A stretch of 5,536 bases of DNA from assembly GCF_006345805.1 (NCBI RefSeq), contig NW_021830089.1, positions 1-5,536 on the forward strand, in the 5' to 3' direction. A program made the translations under genes and the position numbers. Source of the DNA: Octopus sinensis (lineage: Eukaryota). Positions within the stretch are counted from its first letter, which is position 1. Each line of letters opens with the position of its first letter. Under the pieces are notes generated by a model that saw only the letters and a list, made by a program, of their open reading frames with translations, searched no databases and had not been told where the DNA came from. Below, in pieces: positions 461-5,536 of this stretch.

Positions 461-664
461 ATTCTTACTCTTTTGCTTGTTTCAGTCAGTTGACTGCGGC
501 CATGCTGGAGCACCACCTTTAGTCGAGCACATCGACCGCAGGACTTATTCTTTGTAAGCCTAGTACTTATTCTATCAGTCTCTTTTGCCGAACCGCCAAG
601 TTACGGGGACGTAAACACGCCGGCATCGGTTGTCAAGCAATGTTGAGGTGACAAACACAGACAC

Positions 665-700
<36 letters not shown>

Positions 701-887
701 ACACACATATATATACATATATACGATGGGCTTCTTTCAGTTTTTGTCTACCAAATCCACTCACAAGGCTTTGGTCAGCCCAAGGCTATAGTAGAAGACA
801 CTCGCCCAAGGTGCCATGCAGTGGGACTGAACCCGGAACCATGTGGTTTGTAAGCAAGCTACTTACCACACAGCCACTCCTGCACCT
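461..887 (-). mobile_element. Full-length octopus-type tRNA-derived SINE (family A) with internal (AT)/(GT) microsatellite
   Basis: The minus strand begins aggtgcaggag. A-box TGGCTGTGTGG at 876-866 and B-box GGTTCAGTCCC at 833-823. A CORE-like ccttgggcgagtgtcttctac follows, then the internal microsatellite 669-724, a 3' module (taagtactagg...gtcctgcggtcgat) and an A-rich tail gaaacaagcaaaagagtaagaat. A weak target-site duplication (TSD) candidate is 455-469 vs 888-902 (11/15). Three homologous pieces occur elsewhere in the window. Confidence 0.92.
669..724. repeat. (AC)n-(AT)n microsatellite inside SINE A
   Basis: Direct reading. A shorter equivalent sits at the same position in the copy at 4230-4272. 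Confidence 0.95.
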
Positions 888-1002
888 ATCAACTTTCTTA
901 CTATCATGTATGGATTCAGAAATGGAAATATTGTAAATATTCTAAACCAAGAAAATAGGTTCCATGTGGAAGGCATCTTTTCCTAGATTCTCCTGGAAGA
1001 GT

Positions 1003-1139
1003 CACAGGTATGGCTATGTGGTGAAGAAGCTCATTTTGCAACTAAGTGGTCCCAGGTTCTGTCCCACTGCATGGCACTTTGGTAAAATGTCTTCTACTAC
1101 AGCCTCAGGTCAACCAATGCATTGTGATTGAATTTGGTC
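1003..1139 (+). mobile_element. Diverged 5' head of SINE family A, opposite orientation to 461-887
   Basis: A-box TGGCTATGTGG at 1011-1021. Exact blocks gtcccactgcatggcac and tgtcttctacta match the reverse complement of 745-887. Roughly 70-75% identity by eye. Confidence 0.85.
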
Positions 1140-1272: not shown

Positions 1273-1504
1273 CATCTGGTTCACACTATAAAATGGTTGG
1301 ATTAAAACCATACCAAAATGGATCTTGCCTGTGCTGGTGCCACATATAAAGCATTCAGCCCATTCTGTGGTGGGGTTGGTGTTGGGAAGAGCGTCCAGCT
1401 GTAAAATCTGTACCAAAACAGACACAGAAATTTGCTGCAGTCTTCTGCCTGGCCAGCTCCTATCAAACCATCCAATCCATACCAACATGAAAAGTGGACT
1501 CTAA
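1273..1504 (+). mobile_element. Diverged 3' part of an RTE-dependent SINE / non-autonomous RTE-like element, with its (GAT)n tail split by the LINE
   Basis: ggaagagcgtccagctgtaaaa (1385-1406) resembles the GGAAGGGCATCCRGCNGTARAA motif of RTE 5' regions and Ceph-type SINE bodies. The end ccaacatgaaaagtggactctaa resembles the recalled octopus tail gcatggaaaacggacgttaa(atg)n. 1273-1320 looks like an internally deleted partial copy of the same motif. Family identity is from memory. Confidence 0.65.
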
Positions 1505-2195
1505 TCATCATCATCATCATTGTTTGACCGTGGTCGAGACAATAGAATTTACTATGTTATGCCAGACCTCACGGTCCATCATAGCATTACAGAGGTCCTG
1601 TTGCTGGATGCCTGTATCCCTGGAGATTACATCAGGGTAGGAGAGTGTGCGCCCTCTGGTATCGCAAGCAGATGGCTTCCAGAGGAGAAGAGTAGAAATT
1701 ACCTCGTTTTCAGCTCTACAACAATGTCCAGCAAACTGAACTCTTCAACCTTTCCAAAGAGATGATACAGGTGGTACTTTCCCATGTGTTTGTACTTTGT
1801 TTGGATGACGCTTCCACGAGAGATTTTGAGCTCTCATGAGGAGGCGAGTGTAAGTTCCATCCAACCGCCTCTCAAGCTTCTTTGATAACATCCAGGTTTC
1901 TGAGCCATATAGTAGAATTGGTTCAACTGTGGCTTTGAAGATTTTAAGTTTGAAATCTCTCCTTAGATTTGATGACCAGATCTTATGATTATCATTACAG
2001 GTTGACCAGCCCATACCCTTTCTAGTTAGAAAATCTTTTTCAGATGATGAATATGTATGGCCCAAGATATTTGTAATCAGAAACCATATTTAAGAGCGCA
2101 TTGTTGAGAGTATGGATGATGCAATCACTGTTGGACAGGCACTTGTTTACATATTCAGTCTTGGACTCATTGAGGTAAAGACCTACACAATTTGA
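1505..2195 (-). mobile_element. 5'-truncated RTE-clade non-LTR retrotransposon (LINE): end of the RT domain to the C-terminus, with a (TGA)5 tail; pseudogenised
   Basis: The minus strand translates SNCVGLYLNESKTEYVNK...VSDYKYLGPYI, then a +1 frameshift near 2051, then SSSEKDFLTRKGMGW...IFKATVEPILLYGSETWMLSKKLERRLDGTYTRLLMRAQNLSW...KG*RVQFAGHC...LLLWKP...YPDVISRDTG...AMMDREVW...TTVKQ*. GLxLNxxKT, YKYLG, LLYGSETW and FAGH are typical RTE motifs. One nonsense codon at 1745-1747. Confidence 0.95.
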
Positions 2196-2228
2196 TGATA
2201 ATGAAACTATGTGCAAGTGTGTGTGTGT

Positions 2229-2405
2229 GCAGGTTCATGGCCTTGTGGTTAGGCTGGTAGCACTTACAATCACAAGGTTATGGTTTCACTTTCAGGACCA
2301 GGTGATGCATTGTGCACTTGAACAAAACACATAATTTCACATTACTTCAGTCTGTTCAGCTGTATGTGGGTAACCATGCAACAGGCTGGCATTCTGTTCA
2401 GGACA
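2229..2405 (+). mobile_element. Old, diverged tRNA-derived SINE with a head related to the element at 3651
   Basis: A-box TGGCCTTGTGG at 2238-2248 followed by TTAGG. Degenerate B-box ggtttcactttc at 2282-2293. cttgaacaaaacac parallels attgagcgaaaacac of the 3651 element. The body catgcaacaggctggcattctgttcagg resembles the ctgcgatggactggc...gtccagg SINE domain. Confidence 0.7.
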
Positions 2406-2460
2406 GGCAGCGGGTATTGGCTTGCTTGCCTACCATCCTGCTCTCCAGCCTGCCTGTGTT

Positions 2461-2765
2461 CTATATATATAGAAAGAGAGAGACATACGCACATATGCAT
2501 GCACACATACATATATACACAGGCACAAACACACTCACTCATTCACATACACACATCACACACACACATCATACACACACACACACCACGCACACACATC
2601 ACATGCACACACACACACACACACATCACACACACACACCATGCACACACATCACGCACACACATCATGCACACACATCACGCACACACATCACGCACAC
2701 ACATCACACACACACACGCACAATCACACACATCACACACACACATACACATACATTCACACACA
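2461..2765. repeat. Complex (TA)/(GA)/(CA)n microsatellite containing a 13-bp minisatellite (GCACACACATCAC)x5 at 2643-2707
   Basis: Five head-to-tail 13-mers start at 2643, 2656, 2669, 2682 and 2695, with one variant base. Confidence 0.95.
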
Positions 2766-2854
2766 TGGAGATGGAATTCACTTTGACTACCTTGTGTCCT
2801 GGTAAATGTTGAAATATATAAGACTTGGTATAATCTAGAGAAATATAATTTGGA

Positions 2855-3092
2855 ATGCTAAGAGCTGTCAAAAACACCGCCAAAAATATCACATACCCAC
2901 ACACACACATTGAATAACATGTTTGTGTATGCACGCATACATACATACATACATACATACATACATACATGCATGCATGCATGCATGCATGCATGCATGT
3001 ATGTATGTATGCGTGCATACACAAACATGTTATTCAATGTGTGTGTGTGGGTATGTGATATTTTTGGCGGTGTTTTTGACAGCTCTTAGCAT
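2855..3092. repeat. Perfect 96-bp inverted repeat (2855-2950 / 2997-3092) with a 46-bp (ATAC)n-(GCAT)n spacer
   Basis: Checked base by base: position x pairs with 5947-x with no mismatch from 2855 to 2950. The ORFs 2704..3024(-) and 2923..3267(+) share the same peptide for this reason. Confidence 0.98.
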
Positions 3093-3232
3093 ACATACAT
3101 ACATACATACATACATGCATACATACATACATACATACATACATGCATACATACATACATACATACATACATACATACATACATACATACATACATGCAT
3201 GCATGCATGCATGCATGCATGCATGTGTGTGT
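3091..3232. repeat. (ATAC)6-ATGC-(ATAC)6-ATGC-(ATAC)12-AT-(GCAT)7-(GT)n compound microsatellite
   Basis: Direct reading. Interruptions at 3115-3118 and 3143-3146; (GCAT)7 at 3197-3224. Confidence 0.95.
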
Positions 3233-3442
3233 ACATAACTTCTAGAAGGTCTTTTCCAATTCCTTGAATGTCGAGTTTACATGATAATGTCAATGCAGGA
3301 AAAATATCTGACAACAGAAGCAAATTTCCCATATGGAATATGTAATGGATTGTCAAATACAGCTGTTCATTTAGTTCTTTACAATAAACAGAATCTATTC
3401 AATCCTCAATTACACAATATACATAAATGTGTGCATGTCTGT

Positions 3443-3459
3443 TGTGTGTGTGTGTGTGT
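3443..3459. repeat. Short (TG)n microsatellite
   Basis: Direct reading. Confidence 0.9.
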
Positions 3460-3650
3460 CATATGCTTGTAAATGTCTTTAGATATGTGTGTGCATGTAT
3501 AAGGGAAATTTGTAATAGAATACAGTGGAATCACAGTTTACAAATGCCTGTCACTATGATCAAATCAGTTTATGAACAGTTTTTTTGAACACAAGACATT
3601 TAGGGTGATGATGAACGGAGTAACAAACACGCAAGCCGGCAGCAACAGCT

Positions 3651-3850
3651 GTGGAGGCTCAATGGCACAGTGGTTAGGGCAGCGGACTCGCGGTCGGATG
3701 ATCGCGGTTTTGATTCCCAGACCGGGCGTTGTGTGTGTTTATTGAGCGAAAACACCTAAAGCTCCACGAGGCTCCGGCAGGGGGTGGTGGCGACCCCTGT
3801 TGTACTCTTTCGCTCCAACTTTCTCTCACTCTTTCTTCCTGTTTCTTGTC
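3651..3850 (+). mobile_element. Relatively young octopus tRNA-derived SINE (OR-like head and body), possibly extending to about 4172
   Basis: Perfect A-box TGGCACAGTGG at 3663-3673 and degenerate B-box ggttttgattcc at 3706-3717. CpG-rich. The body attgagcgaaaacacctaaagctccacgaggctccggcaggg...actttctctcactctttcttcctgtttc matches an abundant octopus SINE as I recall it. Confidence 0.88.
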
Positions 3851-4183
3851 CCTGACTTCCTACACAACCACTGAGCTTGGATGCACATTCATCCATCCGT
3901 TGATGCTCTCAGTGTCGGGGATTGACCTGCTTTCTCTTCTGCAGGTCTTACTAATAGCAAAGGACCACATTTTGGACTTCTCCCATCTTGCAAGCTCTGG
4001 AACGAAGACCGTTCACTCAACAGCTGGCATCAAGCTGGGGGTATTGGTGACCGATACTGTCAGTTGCTGTCTAGATTTTGCTCCTTGCTCATTCCTGCTC
4101 GACTTCAATGTGCTTCCTCTTGAATTCTCCTTGGGACAAAATAGTTTGGGTTTACGAGCATTTCAGGCAACAAACAGCCTTCT

Positions 4184-4430
4184 GGGATGGAAGCACACCA
4201 GCATCGGTTGTCAAGCGATGTTGGAGAGACAAACACAAACACATAAACACACACACACATACATATATATATGCGACGGGCTCCTTTCGGTTTCTGACTA
4301 CCAAATCCACTCTTTGGTTGGCCCAAGGCTATAGTAGAAGACACTTGCCCGAGGTGCCACGCAGTGGGAATTAACCCGGAACCATGTAGTTGGTAAGCAA
4401 GCTACTTACCACACAGTCACTCCTGCGCCT
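4184..4430 (-). mobile_element. 5' two-thirds of SINE family A (3' module missing)
   Basis: Colinear with about 606-887, with an 8-bp deletion of cacaaggc. The 5' end is aggcgcaggagtgactgtgtgg. Homology stops at about 4184. Confidence 0.92.
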
Positions 4431-4560
4431 CCCTTTTTTTTAATCCTTTCTTGTGTTATTTCAATTAATTCAAAAAATATTTTTACCGTAGTTTTTTTTT
4501 TTCTTTTTTGTTTTTATCTATGTTTTTGTGTAACTCTTTTCATCCTTTATAACTTTTTCA
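4431..4560. repeat. T-rich low-complexity tract
   Basis: Multiple poly-T runs. Confidence 0.7.
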
Positions 4561-4561
4561 T

Positions 4562-4880
4562 TTATTACCTCTGCCTTAGCGAAGGCAGAGATATCGTTTT
4601 CAGTCATGTTTGTTTGTTTGTTTGTTTGTCCATGGACAAGATATCTCAAGAACCCCTGGATGGATTAAGAATAAAACTTTAAGGCATGTTTGACCTCGTG
4701 AGCGGCATGAACTGATTAGATTTTAGAGAGCAGTCGGGTTCATTTTTAGTATTCCCATTTGTGAGAGCAGTCAAGTTTATTTCAGATATTCTCATTTTAA
4801 AAACCATCTCCAGCTAATCATTGAGAGGACATTAGTGTTGCCTTGGTGGAGGTTTTCACTTTCTGAGTGCACTTACTATT
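4562..4880 (+). mobile_element. Non-autonomous Helentron (HINE / DINE-1-like rolling-circle element)
   Basis: Starts ttattacctctgcc. The 5' hairpin is ctctgcctt-agcg-aaggcagag (4569-4590, 9-bp stem). (GTTT)5 at 4608-4627 and a 37-bp tandem pair at 4726/4763. The 3' subterminal inverted repeat (subTIR) ggtggaggt (4845-4853) is inverted to acctctgcc (4567-4575, 7/9). A 3' stem-loop cactt-tct-gagtg follows, and both ends are T-rich. Confidence 0.8.
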
Positions 4881-4895
4881 ATTAATTAGCTACAA

Positions 4896-5051
4896 AAGGT
4901 GACGAGTGGGTGAATGGTTAGCACGTCAGGCGAAAAGCTTAGTATTATTTCGCCCATTGCTATGTACCGAGTTCAAATTCCACTGAGGTCCACTTTACCT
5001 TTCATCCTTTTGGGGTCGATAAATTAAGTACCAGCTGAGTACTGGGGTCAA
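4896..5051 (+). mobile_element. 3'-truncated octopus SINE with a Meta-like central domain
   Basis: Degenerate tRNA-like head with B-box-like gagttcaaattcc, then ctttacctttcatccttttggggtcgataaattaagtaccagctgagtactggggtc, which resembles the MetaSINE-type domain as recalled. It ends abruptly at about 5051. Confidence 0.8.
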
Positions 5052-5100
5052 ACATTGGTGTTGACTTAGTGGTGATTTGCACTCTCTGGGTGCTCTTGTT
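5052..5100 (+). mobile_element. Orphan second Helentron/HINE 3' terminus
   Basis: 38/49 ungapped identity to 4829-4877, including the subTIR region and the hairpin gcactc-tct-gggtgc. Confidence 0.75.
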
Positions 5101-5280
5101 GGTTTTAAAATTTGAATAAAAACCTTCCTTCTTTTCAGACATATGTCAACAGAGTGCCGAGTAGAAAAACCACAAATGAACTTCTCAATGACAATCTAAT
5201 ACTCTATTCCTTGGGGTTTTGGTACCAGCTAATATAAATAATCACTATCTTAGACATGCTTCCTGGTTCTTTTATATAAA

Positions 5281-5302
5281 TTTTATCTCCTTTATTCCTT
5301 AG
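5281..5302 (+). promoter_or_regulatory. 3' splice acceptor (polypyrimidine tract + AG)
   Basis: ttttatctcctttattccttAG, with AG at 5301-5302. Confidence 0.85.
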
Positions 5303-5482
5303 GTCGTGGTTTTGGCAGCATTCTCACAGGAGTACTATTTACCATAGTCGGTGGTCTCTGGACATGGAGAATCTACAGCATAGCTGCATTCCTCATGATT
5401 CTCATAGCTATTCCTCTGCAGTGGTTTTTCTCAAAGGAAACTCAAAGAATGGAAGTTCCAGAACAAGCAAATAAATTTGAAA
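5303..5482 (+). CDS. MFSD6: Internal coding exon (180 bp, phase 1-1) of an MFSD6-like major facilitator superfamily transporter, C-terminal TM helices
   Basis: The stop-free translation (G)RGFGSILTGVLFTIVGGLWTWRIYSIAAFLMILIAIPLQWFFSKETQRMEVPEQANKFE resembles the MFSD6 GRGCGAMIGGVL...FGAAATFR segment as recalled: two hydrophobic helices, then a polar tail. It is flanked by a canonical AG and GTAAGT. The symbol is family-level only and the paralog is unknown. The exon is missing from the ORF track. Confidence 0.8.
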
Positions 5483-5488
5483 GTAAGT
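5483..5488 (+). promoter_or_regulatory. 5' splice donor GTAAGT
   Basis: Perfect consensus after TTT GAA A. Confidence 0.85.
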
Positions 5489-5536
5489 ATAACGGAAAGA
5501 ATGGAATATGAAATCGGAATAATTTATCACATTCAT

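What the first reader, a model, noticed from the sequence alone, without database searches (positions are those of the whole stretch)
2855..3232. Perfect fold-back inverted duplication nucleated at a palindromic (GCAT)7 microsatellite, then re-entry into the array
Seen: the order is A-(ATAC)8-(GCAT)7-(GTAT)3-A'(inverted, zero mismatches over 96 bp)-(ATAC)~26-(GCAT)7-unique. Both GCAT tracts have exactly 7 units followed by GT. (GCAT)n is self-complementary, and the return point uses the gcat/atgc microhomology at 3089-3092. Inference: the polymerase folded back at the (GCAT)n hairpin, copied about 95 bp backwards, then switched back into the ATAC array. That would be a micro-scale DUP-INV-DUP template switch of the FoSTeS/MMBIR kind. 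If genuine, (ATAC)n(GCAT)n compound repeats could be a recurrent palindrome generator in cephalopod introns, giving a perfect dsRNA stem in the pre-mRNA. Perfect identity means it is either very recent or a long-read fold-back or assembly artefact.
Basis: partly seen in the sequence, partly recalled or inferred. Interest (0 to 1): 0.7.

Follow-up and report, generated by a model that had tools for sequence, protein, structure and literature searches.

The report
Inherited fold-back inverted duplication in octopus
A 238-base hairpin-forming inverted duplication centred on a self-complementary (CATG)n microsatellite is real and is also found at the matching site of an independent Octopus vulgaris assembly, so it is an inherited replication or repair scar of a known kind, not a sequencing artefact or a brand-new mutation.

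Summary
Window 2855-3092 is a 238-nt zero-spacer palindrome, centre 2973|2974. Its outer 96 nt are perfectly complementary, and its only five mismatches are periodic A-opposite-C positions in the microsatellite core. The order is A-(CATA)8-(CATG)8-(TATG)3-A'-(CATA)26 with two CATG interruptions-(CATG)8-TGTGTGT-B.

The new result is that the orthologous site of the Octopus vulgaris chromosome assembly (OX597835.1, 0.76% substitution divergence) carries the same palindrome. It has the same arms, the same (TATG)3 and the same terminal (CATG)8, but different repeat numbers, a 4-nt indel in one arm and 7 extra bases at the return junction. This rules out an assembly or read artefact and a private, very recent event.

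The best explanation is a fold-back template switch at a (CATG)8 hairpin. Single-stranded (CATG)8 folds flush at -16.4 kcal/mol. About 100 nt were copied backwards, then a second switch re-entered the array. The result is a micro-scale DUP-TRP/INV-like product.

Recurrence and dsRNA or editing effects could not be tested. I rate it a new member of a known kind, of modest interest.

The parts
2766..2854 (.). Left single-copy flank (LF). It is identical in O. vulgaris and is not part of the palindrome.
   Evidence: 89/89 identical to L001 47327-47415, with no other copy in 68 kb.
2855..2935 (+). Arm A, the non-microsatellite part (81 nt). It is the presumed original copy.
   Evidence: exact reverse complement of 3012-3092; only orthologous matches in L001.
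2936..2967 (+). (CATA)8, first copy of the array.
   Evidence: unit parse. O. vulgaris has (CATA)7.
2968..2999 (.). Central self-complementary (CATG)8, equal to CAT(GCAT)7G. This is the proposed fold-back site. The geometric centre of the palindrome is 2973|2974.
   Evidence: as single-stranded DNA it forms a flush 14-bp hairpin at -16.4 kcal/mol. O. vulgaris has (CATG)5.
3000..3011 (-). (TATG)3, the inverted copy of the (CATA)n array.
   Evidence: There are three units in both genomes, so the 8-versus-3 asymmetry predates their split.
3012..3092 (-). Arm A', the inverted copy of A (81 nt, 0 mismatches).
   Evidence: It is identical to O. vulgaris L001 47550-47633.
3089..3096 (.). Junction 2, from A' into the array. 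It reads GCAT|ACAT in the window. O. vulgaris reads GCATT-TGTGTA-ACAT here.
3090..3193 (+). Third, direct copy of the array: (CATA)6 CATG (CATA)6 CATG (CATA)12.
   Evidence: O. vulgaris has only about 5-6 units here.
3194..3225 (.). Terminal (CATG)8, the direct duplicate of the central tract.
   Evidence: 8 units in both genomes; there is no other (CATG)>=4 tract in 62 kb of O. vulgaris.
3226..3420 (.). TGTGTGT followed by the right single-copy flank B.
   Evidence: 99.5% identical to L001 47701-47888, single copy.

Best explanation
This is a genuine, inherited inverted duplication. It arose once in an ancestor of the window's genome and the sequenced O. vulgaris, by serial template switching of a DNA polymerase.

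Inferred ancestral locus: LF-A-(CATA)n-(CATG)8-TGTGTGTAC-B.

Inferred steps:
1. A nascent 3' end that had just copied (CATG)8 became single-stranded and snapped back on itself. Equivalently, it paired with the complementary strand. The tract is self-complementary, so its last base pairs with its first base.
2. Extension of this hairpin copied the array and arm A backwards, giving (TATG)n-A', about 100 nt, as far as window position 2855 or 2854.
3. The end then dissociated and re-annealed behind its departure point, at or just upstream of the (CATA)n array. It copied the array, (CATG)8 and B again.

The product has the array present three times (direct, inverted, direct) and arm A present twice (direct, inverted). 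This is the topology of a DUP-TRP/INV-DUP rearrangement at a scale of about 0.1 kb, with a zero-spacer inverted repeat (the microsatellite) serving as junction 1.

Since the event, the three arrays and the central tract have changed length independently by slippage, and one arm acquired a 4-nt (CA)2 indel in O. vulgaris.

Two points are not resolved. The sequence cannot say whether the synthesis belonged to a stalled or collapsed replication fork (FoSTeS/MMBIR) or to repair of a break in the array (SD-MMEJ or Pol-theta-type snap-back). There is also no evidence for a present function. The locus would form a hairpin of about 119 bp in DNA, or in a + strand transcript if the intron is transcribed.
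For: Shown:
- The palindrome and its parse.
- The same palindrome at the orthologous site of an independent assembly. L001 47415-47634 is in O. vulgaris GCA_951406725.2, with identical flanks LF and B, the same A/A' extent, the same (TATG)3 and the same terminal (CATG)8.
- The two genomes are independent data. They differ by 18 substitutions in 2364 nt and by many microsatellite indels. The O. vulgaris assembly was made from ONT reads polished with 10x Illumina reads (PMC10700109).
- A, LF and B are single copy in 68 kb.
- The only two (CATG)>=4 tracts in 62 kb of O. vulgaris are the two at this locus. The second tract is therefore a local duplicate and not a coincidence.
- Single-stranded (CATG)8 folds into a flush 14-bp hairpin at -16.4 kcal/mol, whereas (CATA)8 does not fold. 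Extending such a hairpin keeps the tract at 8 units and then writes (TATG)n-A', which is the order seen in the window.

Inferred:
- The order of events, and that it was a single compound event.
- The age. Zero arm substitutions in both genomes has P about 0.28 if the event occurred at the split, and falls below 0.05 if the event preceded the split by more than about 2.7 split-times. This assumes no gene conversion.
- The analogy to DUP-TRP/INV-DUP: junction 1 at inverted repeats, junction 2 by microhomology or small insertions (PMC11293582).
- The analogy to the four-point template-switch model (PMC5453318).
Against: - No genome with the pre-event 'simple allele' could be retrieved, so polarity and the single-event claim remain inferences.
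- A single fold-back predicts equal numbers of (CATA) and (TATG) units, but the counts are 8 versus 3 (7 versus 3 in O. vulgaris). Slippage during or after the event, before the two genomes split, has to be invoked.
- The first array copy lacks the two CATG interruptions of the third copy.
- Junction 2 differs between the two genomes. The 3-4-nt microhomology seen in the window may be secondary, and O. vulgaris has 7 unexplained bases (TTGTGTA) there.
- In the four-point model this event has switch point 4 before point 1. That class was not observed among short template switches in human-chimp comparisons, so it is not a typical short-range template-switch mutation.
Confidence: 0.65

Rival explanations
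1. The product and the fold-back are the same, but they were made during repair of a double-strand break inside the (CATA)n array, not at a replication fork. The left 3' end first copied (CATG)8 from the other end or from the sister chromatid. It then dissociated, snapped back on the self-complementary tract and copied (TATG)n-A'. Finally it annealed by microhomology to the right end. This is synthesis-dependent MMEJ or Pol-theta-type snap-back synthesis.
For: Snap-back synthesis at sequences that form secondary structure, and foldback-templated inverted insertions at breaks, are documented (PMC5728401, PMC11724301, PMC11292364). The flush (CATG)8 hairpin is an ideal snap-back primer. The few extra bases at junction 2 in O. 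vulgaris resemble the small insertions typical of end joining.
Against: Documented foldback-templated inverted insertions at breaks are mostly about 5-34 bp (PMC11724301 abstract), whereas this one is about 100 nt. Extra rounds of synthesis are needed to explain the direct duplication of the array and (CATG)8. The sequence alone cannot separate this reading from the replicative version.
Confidence: 0.25
2. Two or more separate events. First a simple fold-back inverted duplication gave LF-A-array-(CATG)n-array'-A'-TGTGTGTA...B. Later a second, independent duplication or de novo microsatellite growth created the (CATA)n(CATG)8 block to the right of A'.
For: In O. vulgaris, A' is followed by T-TGTGTA-ACATA. 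This resembles the sequence after the terminal tract, (CATG)8-TGTGTGTA-CATAAC, as if A' had originally been joined to B. Simple inverted-repeat-creating switches (types 1-4-3-2 and 3-2-1-4) are the classes actually observed in primates.
Against: It needs a second event that recreates exactly (CATG)8 next to a (CATA)n array, although no other (CATG)>=4 tract occurs in 62 kb. The TGTGTA similarity is short and lies in low-complexity TG-rich sequence. The same 7-mer TTGTGTA also occurs inside arm A at 2921-2927, which gives a competing reading.
Confidence: 0.12
3. The 238-nt palindrome is a miniature inverted-repeat or foldback-type transposable element that inserted next to a pre-existing (CATA)n(CATG)8 array.
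For: Long terminal inverted repeats are present by definition. The neighbouring 62 kb of O. vulgaris holds two other large inverted-repeat structures (L001 7290-7966 and 50813-51326), so such structures are not rare in this genome.
Against: - There is no target-site duplication at either set of boundaries. The window has ATAATTTGGA | ACATACATAC and O. vulgaris has TATAATTTGG | TGTGTAACAT.
- There is no other copy of the arm in 68 kb, and no match in the metagenome or viral contig scans.
- The element would have to carry internally the same rare (CATA)n(CATG)8 compound repeat as its insertion site.
- It is present at the same site in both genomes.
Confidence: 0.04
4. A long-read fold-back chimera or an assembly or polishing artefact.
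For: The arms are perfectly identical in the window. The tract is self-complementary, which can confuse assemblers. In O. vulgaris the locus lies only about 1 kb from a scaffold gap (L001 46294-46393).
Against: Two independently sequenced genomes show the same structure and boundaries but different repeat numbers, an arm indel and 0.76% substitutions in the flanks. Both flanks are collinear across the structure. The three array copies have diverged in length, which a read chimera would not produce. An artefact would need two precise junctions reproduced in both assemblies.
Confidence: 0.03

Closest known systems
DUP-TRP/INV-DUP complex rearrangements (Carvalho et al.; PMC11293582), formed by BIR/MMBIR with iterative template switches
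   Same: The topology matches. The segment between the two junctions (the array plus (CATG)n) is present three times with the middle copy inverted, and the neighbouring segment (A) is duplicated in inverted orientation. Junction 1 lies in an inverted repeat. Junction 2 is a microhomology or small-insertion junction.
   Different: The scale is about 0.1-0.2 kb instead of 16-575 kb or more. Junction 1 uses a single self-complementary microsatellite (a zero-spacer inverted repeat of 32 nt), not a pair of separated kilobase low-copy repeats. This is an evolutionary fixed or shared variant in an octopus, not a pathogenic human CNV.
Short-range template-switch mutations, four-point model (Loytynoja and Goldman 2017, PMC5453318; Monttinen and Loytynoja 2022, PMC8794818)
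   Same: [quoted passage not shown] This creates a perfect inverted repeat, and so a hairpin, de novo.
   Different: The switch-point order here is 3-4-2-1, with point 4 before point 1, which gives a direct duplication as well. That class was reported as not observed in human-chimp and human-human comparisons. Those scans also focused on complex, unique sequence rather than on microsatellites.
Fold-back priming or snap-back synthesis at short inverted repeats (SD-MMEJ, PMC5728401; foldback-templated inverted insertions in yeast, PMC11724301; palindrome formation from short inverted repeats in Tetrahymena and yeast, cited from my own knowledge)
   Same: A 3' end folds on a short self-complementary sequence and primes synthesis of an inverted copy of the adjacent DNA.
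   Different: The reported break-site insertions are mostly 5-34 bp, and the classical cases give giant palindromes or dicentric chromosomes. Here synthesis stopped after about 100 nt and returned to the original template.
Microsatellite-derived hairpins such as the rodent miR-466/467 cluster built on adjacent complementary (CA)n/(TG)n or (TATG)n repeats (PMC3212979)
   Same: An intronic hairpin whose core is made of complementary microsatellite arrays of the CATA/TATG type.
   Different: In those cases the stem is the microsatellite itself. Here the microsatellite is only the core, and 81 nt of unique sequence per arm were duplicated in inverted orientation. No small RNA is known from this locus, and there is no Rfam match.

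Membership tests
Template-switch (fold-back) inverted duplication | A fragment identical to the reverse complement of immediately adjacent sequence. | tested here: met
   96 nt with 0 mismatches, within 119-nt arms that have 5 periodic mismatches.
Template-switch (fold-back) inverted duplication | The first switch lies at a sequence able to pair with itself or with the opposite strand. | tested here: met
   The centre lies in (CATG)8. As single-stranded DNA this forms a flush 14-bp hairpin at -16.4 kcal/mol.
Template-switch (fold-back) inverted duplication | An ancestral or outgroup allele lacks the inverted copy. | not testable with these tools
   Only one other octopus genome locus could be fetched (L001), and it carries the derived structure. 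ORF look-ups, a protein search and DNA scans found no further orthologues.
DUP-TRP/INV-DUP | The middle copy of a triplicated segment is inverted and flanked by duplicated sequence. | tested here: met
   The array is present as (CATA)8(CATG)8, then (TATG)3, then (CATA)26(CATG)8. A is present once direct and once inverted.
DUP-TRP/INV-DUP | Junction 2 shows microhomology, a blunt join or a small insertion. | tested here: inconclusive
   The window has GCAT|ACAT, with 3-4 nt shared. O. vulgaris has GCATT-TGTGTA-ACAT. The ancestral state is unknown.
DUP-TRP/INV-DUP | Mediated by a pair of separated inverted low-copy repeats, at kilobase-to-megabase scale. | tested here: not met
   A single 32-nt self-complementary tract mediates it, and the whole structure is under 0.4 kb. 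It therefore works like this family but is not a member in the strict sense.
Short-range template-switch mutation (four-point model, observed classes) | Switch-point order in which point 4 does not precede point 1. | tested here: not met
   The direct duplication of the array requires point 4 before point 1 (order 3-4-2-1). This class was not observed in primates.
MITE or foldback transposon | Target-site duplication flanking the terminal inverted repeats. | tested here: not met
   There is no direct repeat at the boundaries in either genome.
MITE or foldback transposon | Multiple dispersed copies. | tested here: inconclusive
   There is no second copy in 68 kb of octopus DNA or in the metagenome and viral scans. 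No whole octopus genome was searchable.
Assembly or read artefact | Absent from independently generated sequence of the same locus. | tested here: not met
   It is present in O. vulgaris GCA_951406725.2 with independent differences.

The most novel reading that the evidence does not exclude
Self-complementary (CATG)n tracts next to (CATA)n arrays could be recurrent fold-back nucleation sites in octopus genomes. They would produce re-replicating template switches (point 4 before point 1), a class not seen among primate short template switches. They would also seed long, near-perfect intronic dsRNA hairpins that feed the cephalopod ADAR system. The five A-opposite-C mismatches near the apex of this hairpin would be favoured editing positions.
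Probability: 0.1. Interest if true: 0.55.

Novelty: new member of a known kind. Interest (0 to 1): 0.3.

Why it matters
This is a clean natural example, seen in two genomes, of how a short self-complementary microsatellite can convert unique DNA into a long palindrome in one step. It does so at a scale between the short template-switch mutations (tens of bases) catalogued in primates and the kilobase-to-megabase DUP-TRP/INV-DUP rearrangements of human disease. It shows that a 238-nt zero-spacer palindrome can persist for roughly the O. vulgaris/O. sinensis divergence time, with instability concentrated at its centre. If such events are common in cephalopods they would be a ready source of intronic dsRNA. 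As a single locus with no shown function, it is a mutational curiosity rather than a discovery.

Tried and rejected
1. Exact look-ups of three window ORFs that cross the arms or flanks found nothing (2704-3024 minus, 3030-3356 minus, 3281-3472 plus).
2. A protein search with the translated arm plus left flank found no candidate. Prodigal-style ORFs of this locus from other octopus runs are therefore not in the collection.
3. Exact 24-mer scans of the arm in JGI metagenome contigs and in IMG/VR found nothing.
4. I tried to sample more octopus DNA through relatives of the LINE reverse-transcriptase fragment in the window. The hits lie mostly on short ENA contigs. The longest ones fetched (L002, L003) share only the LINE at about 72% identity and carry no octopus SINEs, so they come from other organisms and cannot serve as background. 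Genome-wide recurrence therefore could not be tested.
5. The Rfam and tRNA scans of the window were empty.
6. Large 'inverted repeats' at L001 55428-56784 and 9535-9888 are only (AT)n-rich arrays, trivially self-complementary and not comparable.
7. I considered, and left unresolved, the origin of the O. vulgaris TTGTGTA at junction 2. It could mean the return point lay inside arm A (the same 7-mer is at window 2921-2927), or that A' was originally joined to the TGTGTGTA that follows the terminal tract. Both similarities are short and low-complexity.

Full report
**What is in the window.**
Positions 2855-3092 form a 238-nt palindrome with no spacer. The arms are 2855-2973 and 2974-3092, and the centre is 2973|2974.
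- The outer 96 nt of each arm (2855-2950 and 2997-3092) are exact reverse complements.
- The only mismatches are five pairs spaced 4 nt apart: 2951/2996, 2955/2992, 2959/2988, 2963/2984 and 2967/2980. Each has A on the left and C on the right.
- These mismatches arise because the left side carries (CATA)8 and the right side only (TATG)3.

Parsed in tetramers, the locus reads:

| Coordinates | Content |
|---|---|
| 2766-2854 | LF, left single-copy flank |
| 2855-2935 | A, 81 nt of non-repeat sequence |
| 2936-2967 | (CATA)8 |
| 3000-3011 | (TATG)3 |
| 3012-3092 | A', inverted copy of A |
| 3090-3193 | (CATA)6 CATG (CATA)6 CATG (CATA)12 |
| 3194-3225 | (CATG)8 |
| 3226-3232 | TGTGTGT |
| 3233 onward | B, right single-copy flank |

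Chance is excluded in two ways. An arm probe has 0 expected matches in shuffles. The fold energy is -191 kcal/mol, z = -25.

**Where the window comes from.**
An open reading frame with AG/GT splice sites at 5302-5484 matches a single protein, an Octopus vulgaris 'hypothetical predicted protein' P0001. It has a weak MFS_1 match that is below Pfam's cut-off.

The gene locus was fetched as L001: O. vulgaris GCA_951406725.2, OX597835.1:33955567-34017713.
- Window 1978-5536 is collinear with L001 46394-49986.
- In window 3173-5536 there are 18 substitutions in 2364 aligned positions, which is 0.76%.
- Collinearity ends at window 1977|1978 only because L001 has a 100-N scaffold gap there.

The window is thus from a different individual, or from a very close species. 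The divergence fits O. sinensis, which split from O. vulgaris 2.5 Mya according to PMC10700109, but I cannot name the source.

In the O. vulgaris gene model the palindrome lies in a 39.7-kb first intron, 2.1 kb upstream of exon 2. Exon 1 of that model is only 11 nt, so 'intronic' is plausible but rests on a weak model.

**The decisive result.**
The orthologous O. vulgaris site carries the same structure:

LF (89/89 identical) - A - (CATA)7 - (CATG)5 - (TATG)3 - A' - TTGTGTA - A(CATA)5 - (CATG)8 - TGTGTGTAC - B

| Feature | Window | O. vulgaris (L001) |
|---|---|---|
| Flanks LF and B | reference | LF 89/89 identical; B 99.5% identical |
| Left arm A | reference | lacks CACA inside a (CA)n run |
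| Right arm A' | reference | identical |
| First array | (CATA)8 | (CATA)7 |
| Central tract | (CATG)8 | (CATG)5 |
| Inverted array | (TATG)3 | (TATG)3 |
| Junction 2 | GCAT\|ACAT | GCATT-TGTGTA-ACAT, 7 extra bases |
| Palindrome extent | 2855-3092 | one base pair longer at each end |
| Third array | 26 units | about 5-6 units |
| Terminal tract | (CATG)8 | (CATG)8 |

The O. vulgaris assembly was built from ONT reads with NextDenovo and polished with 10x Illumina reads. Two independent data sets that share both junctions yet differ in fast-evolving details cannot be explained by a fold-back read or an assembler error. The structure is also not private to one individual.

It rested on an over-reading of perfect arm identity. 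At 0.76% divergence only about 0.64 substitutions are expected between 84-nt arms per genome. Seeing none in both genomes has P about 0.28.

The same calculation bounds the age. Without gene conversion the event probably predates the split by less than about 2.7 split-times. O. bimaculoides (34 My) is therefore predicted to carry the simple allele.

**Is it a mobile element?**
- Arm A, LF and B each occur only at this locus in the 68 kb of octopus DNA available.
- There is no target-site duplication at either set of boundaries.
- The 24-mer scans of public metagenome and viral contigs were empty.
- A transposon would have to carry internally the same rare compound repeat as its target. In 62 kb of O. 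vulgaris the only (CATG)>=4 tracts are the two at this locus.

The second (CATG)8 is thus a local duplicate of the first. A mobile-element origin is unlikely, although a whole-genome copy count was not possible.

**Mechanism.**
The array plus (CATG)n is present in direct, inverted and direct orientation, and A is present in direct and inverted orientation. The simplest history is two template switches in one synthesis episode.

Single-stranded (CATG)8 folds into a flush 14-bp hairpin with a 4-nt loop at -16.4 kcal/mol, and its 3' end pairs with the first base of the tract. (CATA)8 has no structure. Extending that hairpin has three consequences:
1. The tract stays at 8 units, as in the window, where the central and terminal tracts are both 8.
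2. (TATG)n is written next.
3. A' is written after that, as far as 2855 or 2854.

A second switch then returns to or near the start of the array and re-copies the array, (CATG)8 and B.

This is the DUP-TRP/INV-DUP topology: junction 1 in an inverted repeat, junction 2 by microhomology or a small insertion. Here it is shrunk to about 0.1 kb, with a zero-spacer inverted repeat.

In the four-point template-switch notation the order is 3-4-2-1. Point 4 precedes point 1, a class reported as not observed among primate short template switches because it requires re-opening the new duplex. That places the event closer to fork-collapse and re-invasion models (MMBIR/FoSTeS), or to multi-round repair synthesis at a break in the array (SD-MMEJ or Pol theta snap-back), than to ordinary short-range switches. 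The sequence cannot separate the replicative version from the repair version.

**What does not fit neatly.**
- A single fold-back predicts equal (CATA) and (TATG) counts. The counts are 8 versus 3 and 7 versus 3, and (TATG)3 is shared by both genomes. The asymmetry therefore arose at the event or before the two genomes split.
- The third array has two CATG interruptions with a 28-nt period that the first array lacks.
- Junction 2 is not conserved. The window's GCAT|ACAT microhomology may be secondary to a 7-nt loss.
- The O. vulgaris TTGTGTA could be a remnant of a return point inside A (the same 7-mer is at 2921-2927) or of an original join to the TGTGTGTA that follows the terminal tract. That second reading would imply a two-step history. 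Both similarities are short and low-complexity, so I leave this open.

**Consequences today.**
- No function is indicated. Rfam and tRNA scans are empty.
- If transcribed on the + strand, the locus gives a stem of about 119 bp with five A-C mismatches near the apex. From general knowledge of ADAR preferences, A opposite C is a favoured editing context. No RNA data could be examined.
- The central tract differs between the genomes (8 versus 5) while the terminal tract does not (8 versus 8). This is consistent with the centre of a palindrome being its unstable part. It is an inference from one comparison.

**Verdict.**
- The fold-back and template-switch reading is supported as the best explanation.
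- The 'recent or artefact' alternative is refuted.
- The microhomology and '7 = 7' details are not robust.
- The proposal of a recurrent generator of dsRNA in cephalopods is untested.

This is a new member of a known kind of mutation. It is of modest interest, mainly as a well-resolved intermediate-scale example.

Noticed in passing
L001 7290-7508 and 7748-7966: A 219-nt inverted repeat with 99% complementary arms. Both inner arm ends run into (AT)n tracts, and the arms are separated by a 239-nt single-copy spacer. Part of the arm has weak (73%) matches elsewhere in L001. It could be a TIR element or another microsatellite-associated inverted duplication.
   Followed up: partly
L001 50813-51326: A palindrome of about 514 bp made of two copies of a tRNA-like SINE (head, (AAT)n, body) joined head to head. 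The arms are about 91% identical, so it is older than the palindrome under study.
   Followed up: partly
L001 46294-46393; window 1977|1978: A 100-N scaffold gap in the O. vulgaris assembly coincides with the end of collinearity with the window. The window sequence 1-1977 may fill that gap region in the close relative.
   Followed up: partly
window 5302-5484 (+): A probable coding exon with AG/GT splice sites. It encodes a hydrophobic segment with a weak, below-cut-off MFS_1 match. The only database relative is a 102-aa O. vulgaris 'hypothetical predicted protein' whose first exon is 11 nt and lies 39.7 kb upstream, so the gene model looks incomplete.
   Followed up: partly
window about 1500-2220 (-): A fragment of a LINE reverse-transcriptase C-terminal region (ORFs 1745-2065 and 2040-2216). 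Its relatives, at 50-84% identity, lie on ENA 'metagenome' contigs that appear to be host (mollusc-like) DNA.
   Followed up: partly
window 465-889 (+), 999-1138 (-), 4184-4430 (+): Copies of an octopus SINE family that is also present many times in L001 at 73-88% identity. ARAGORN finds no intact tRNA in the window.
   Followed up: no
window 2502-2765: A (CA)n-derived array with a 13-nt higher-order unit (CACACACACACAT) lies just upstream of the left flank. It is about 146 nt longer in O. vulgaris.
   Followed up: no
window 3090-3145: (CATA)6-CATG occurs twice in tandem with a 28-nt period. This suggests a higher-order slippage step inside the third array copy. It is absent from O. vulgaris.
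   Followed up: no
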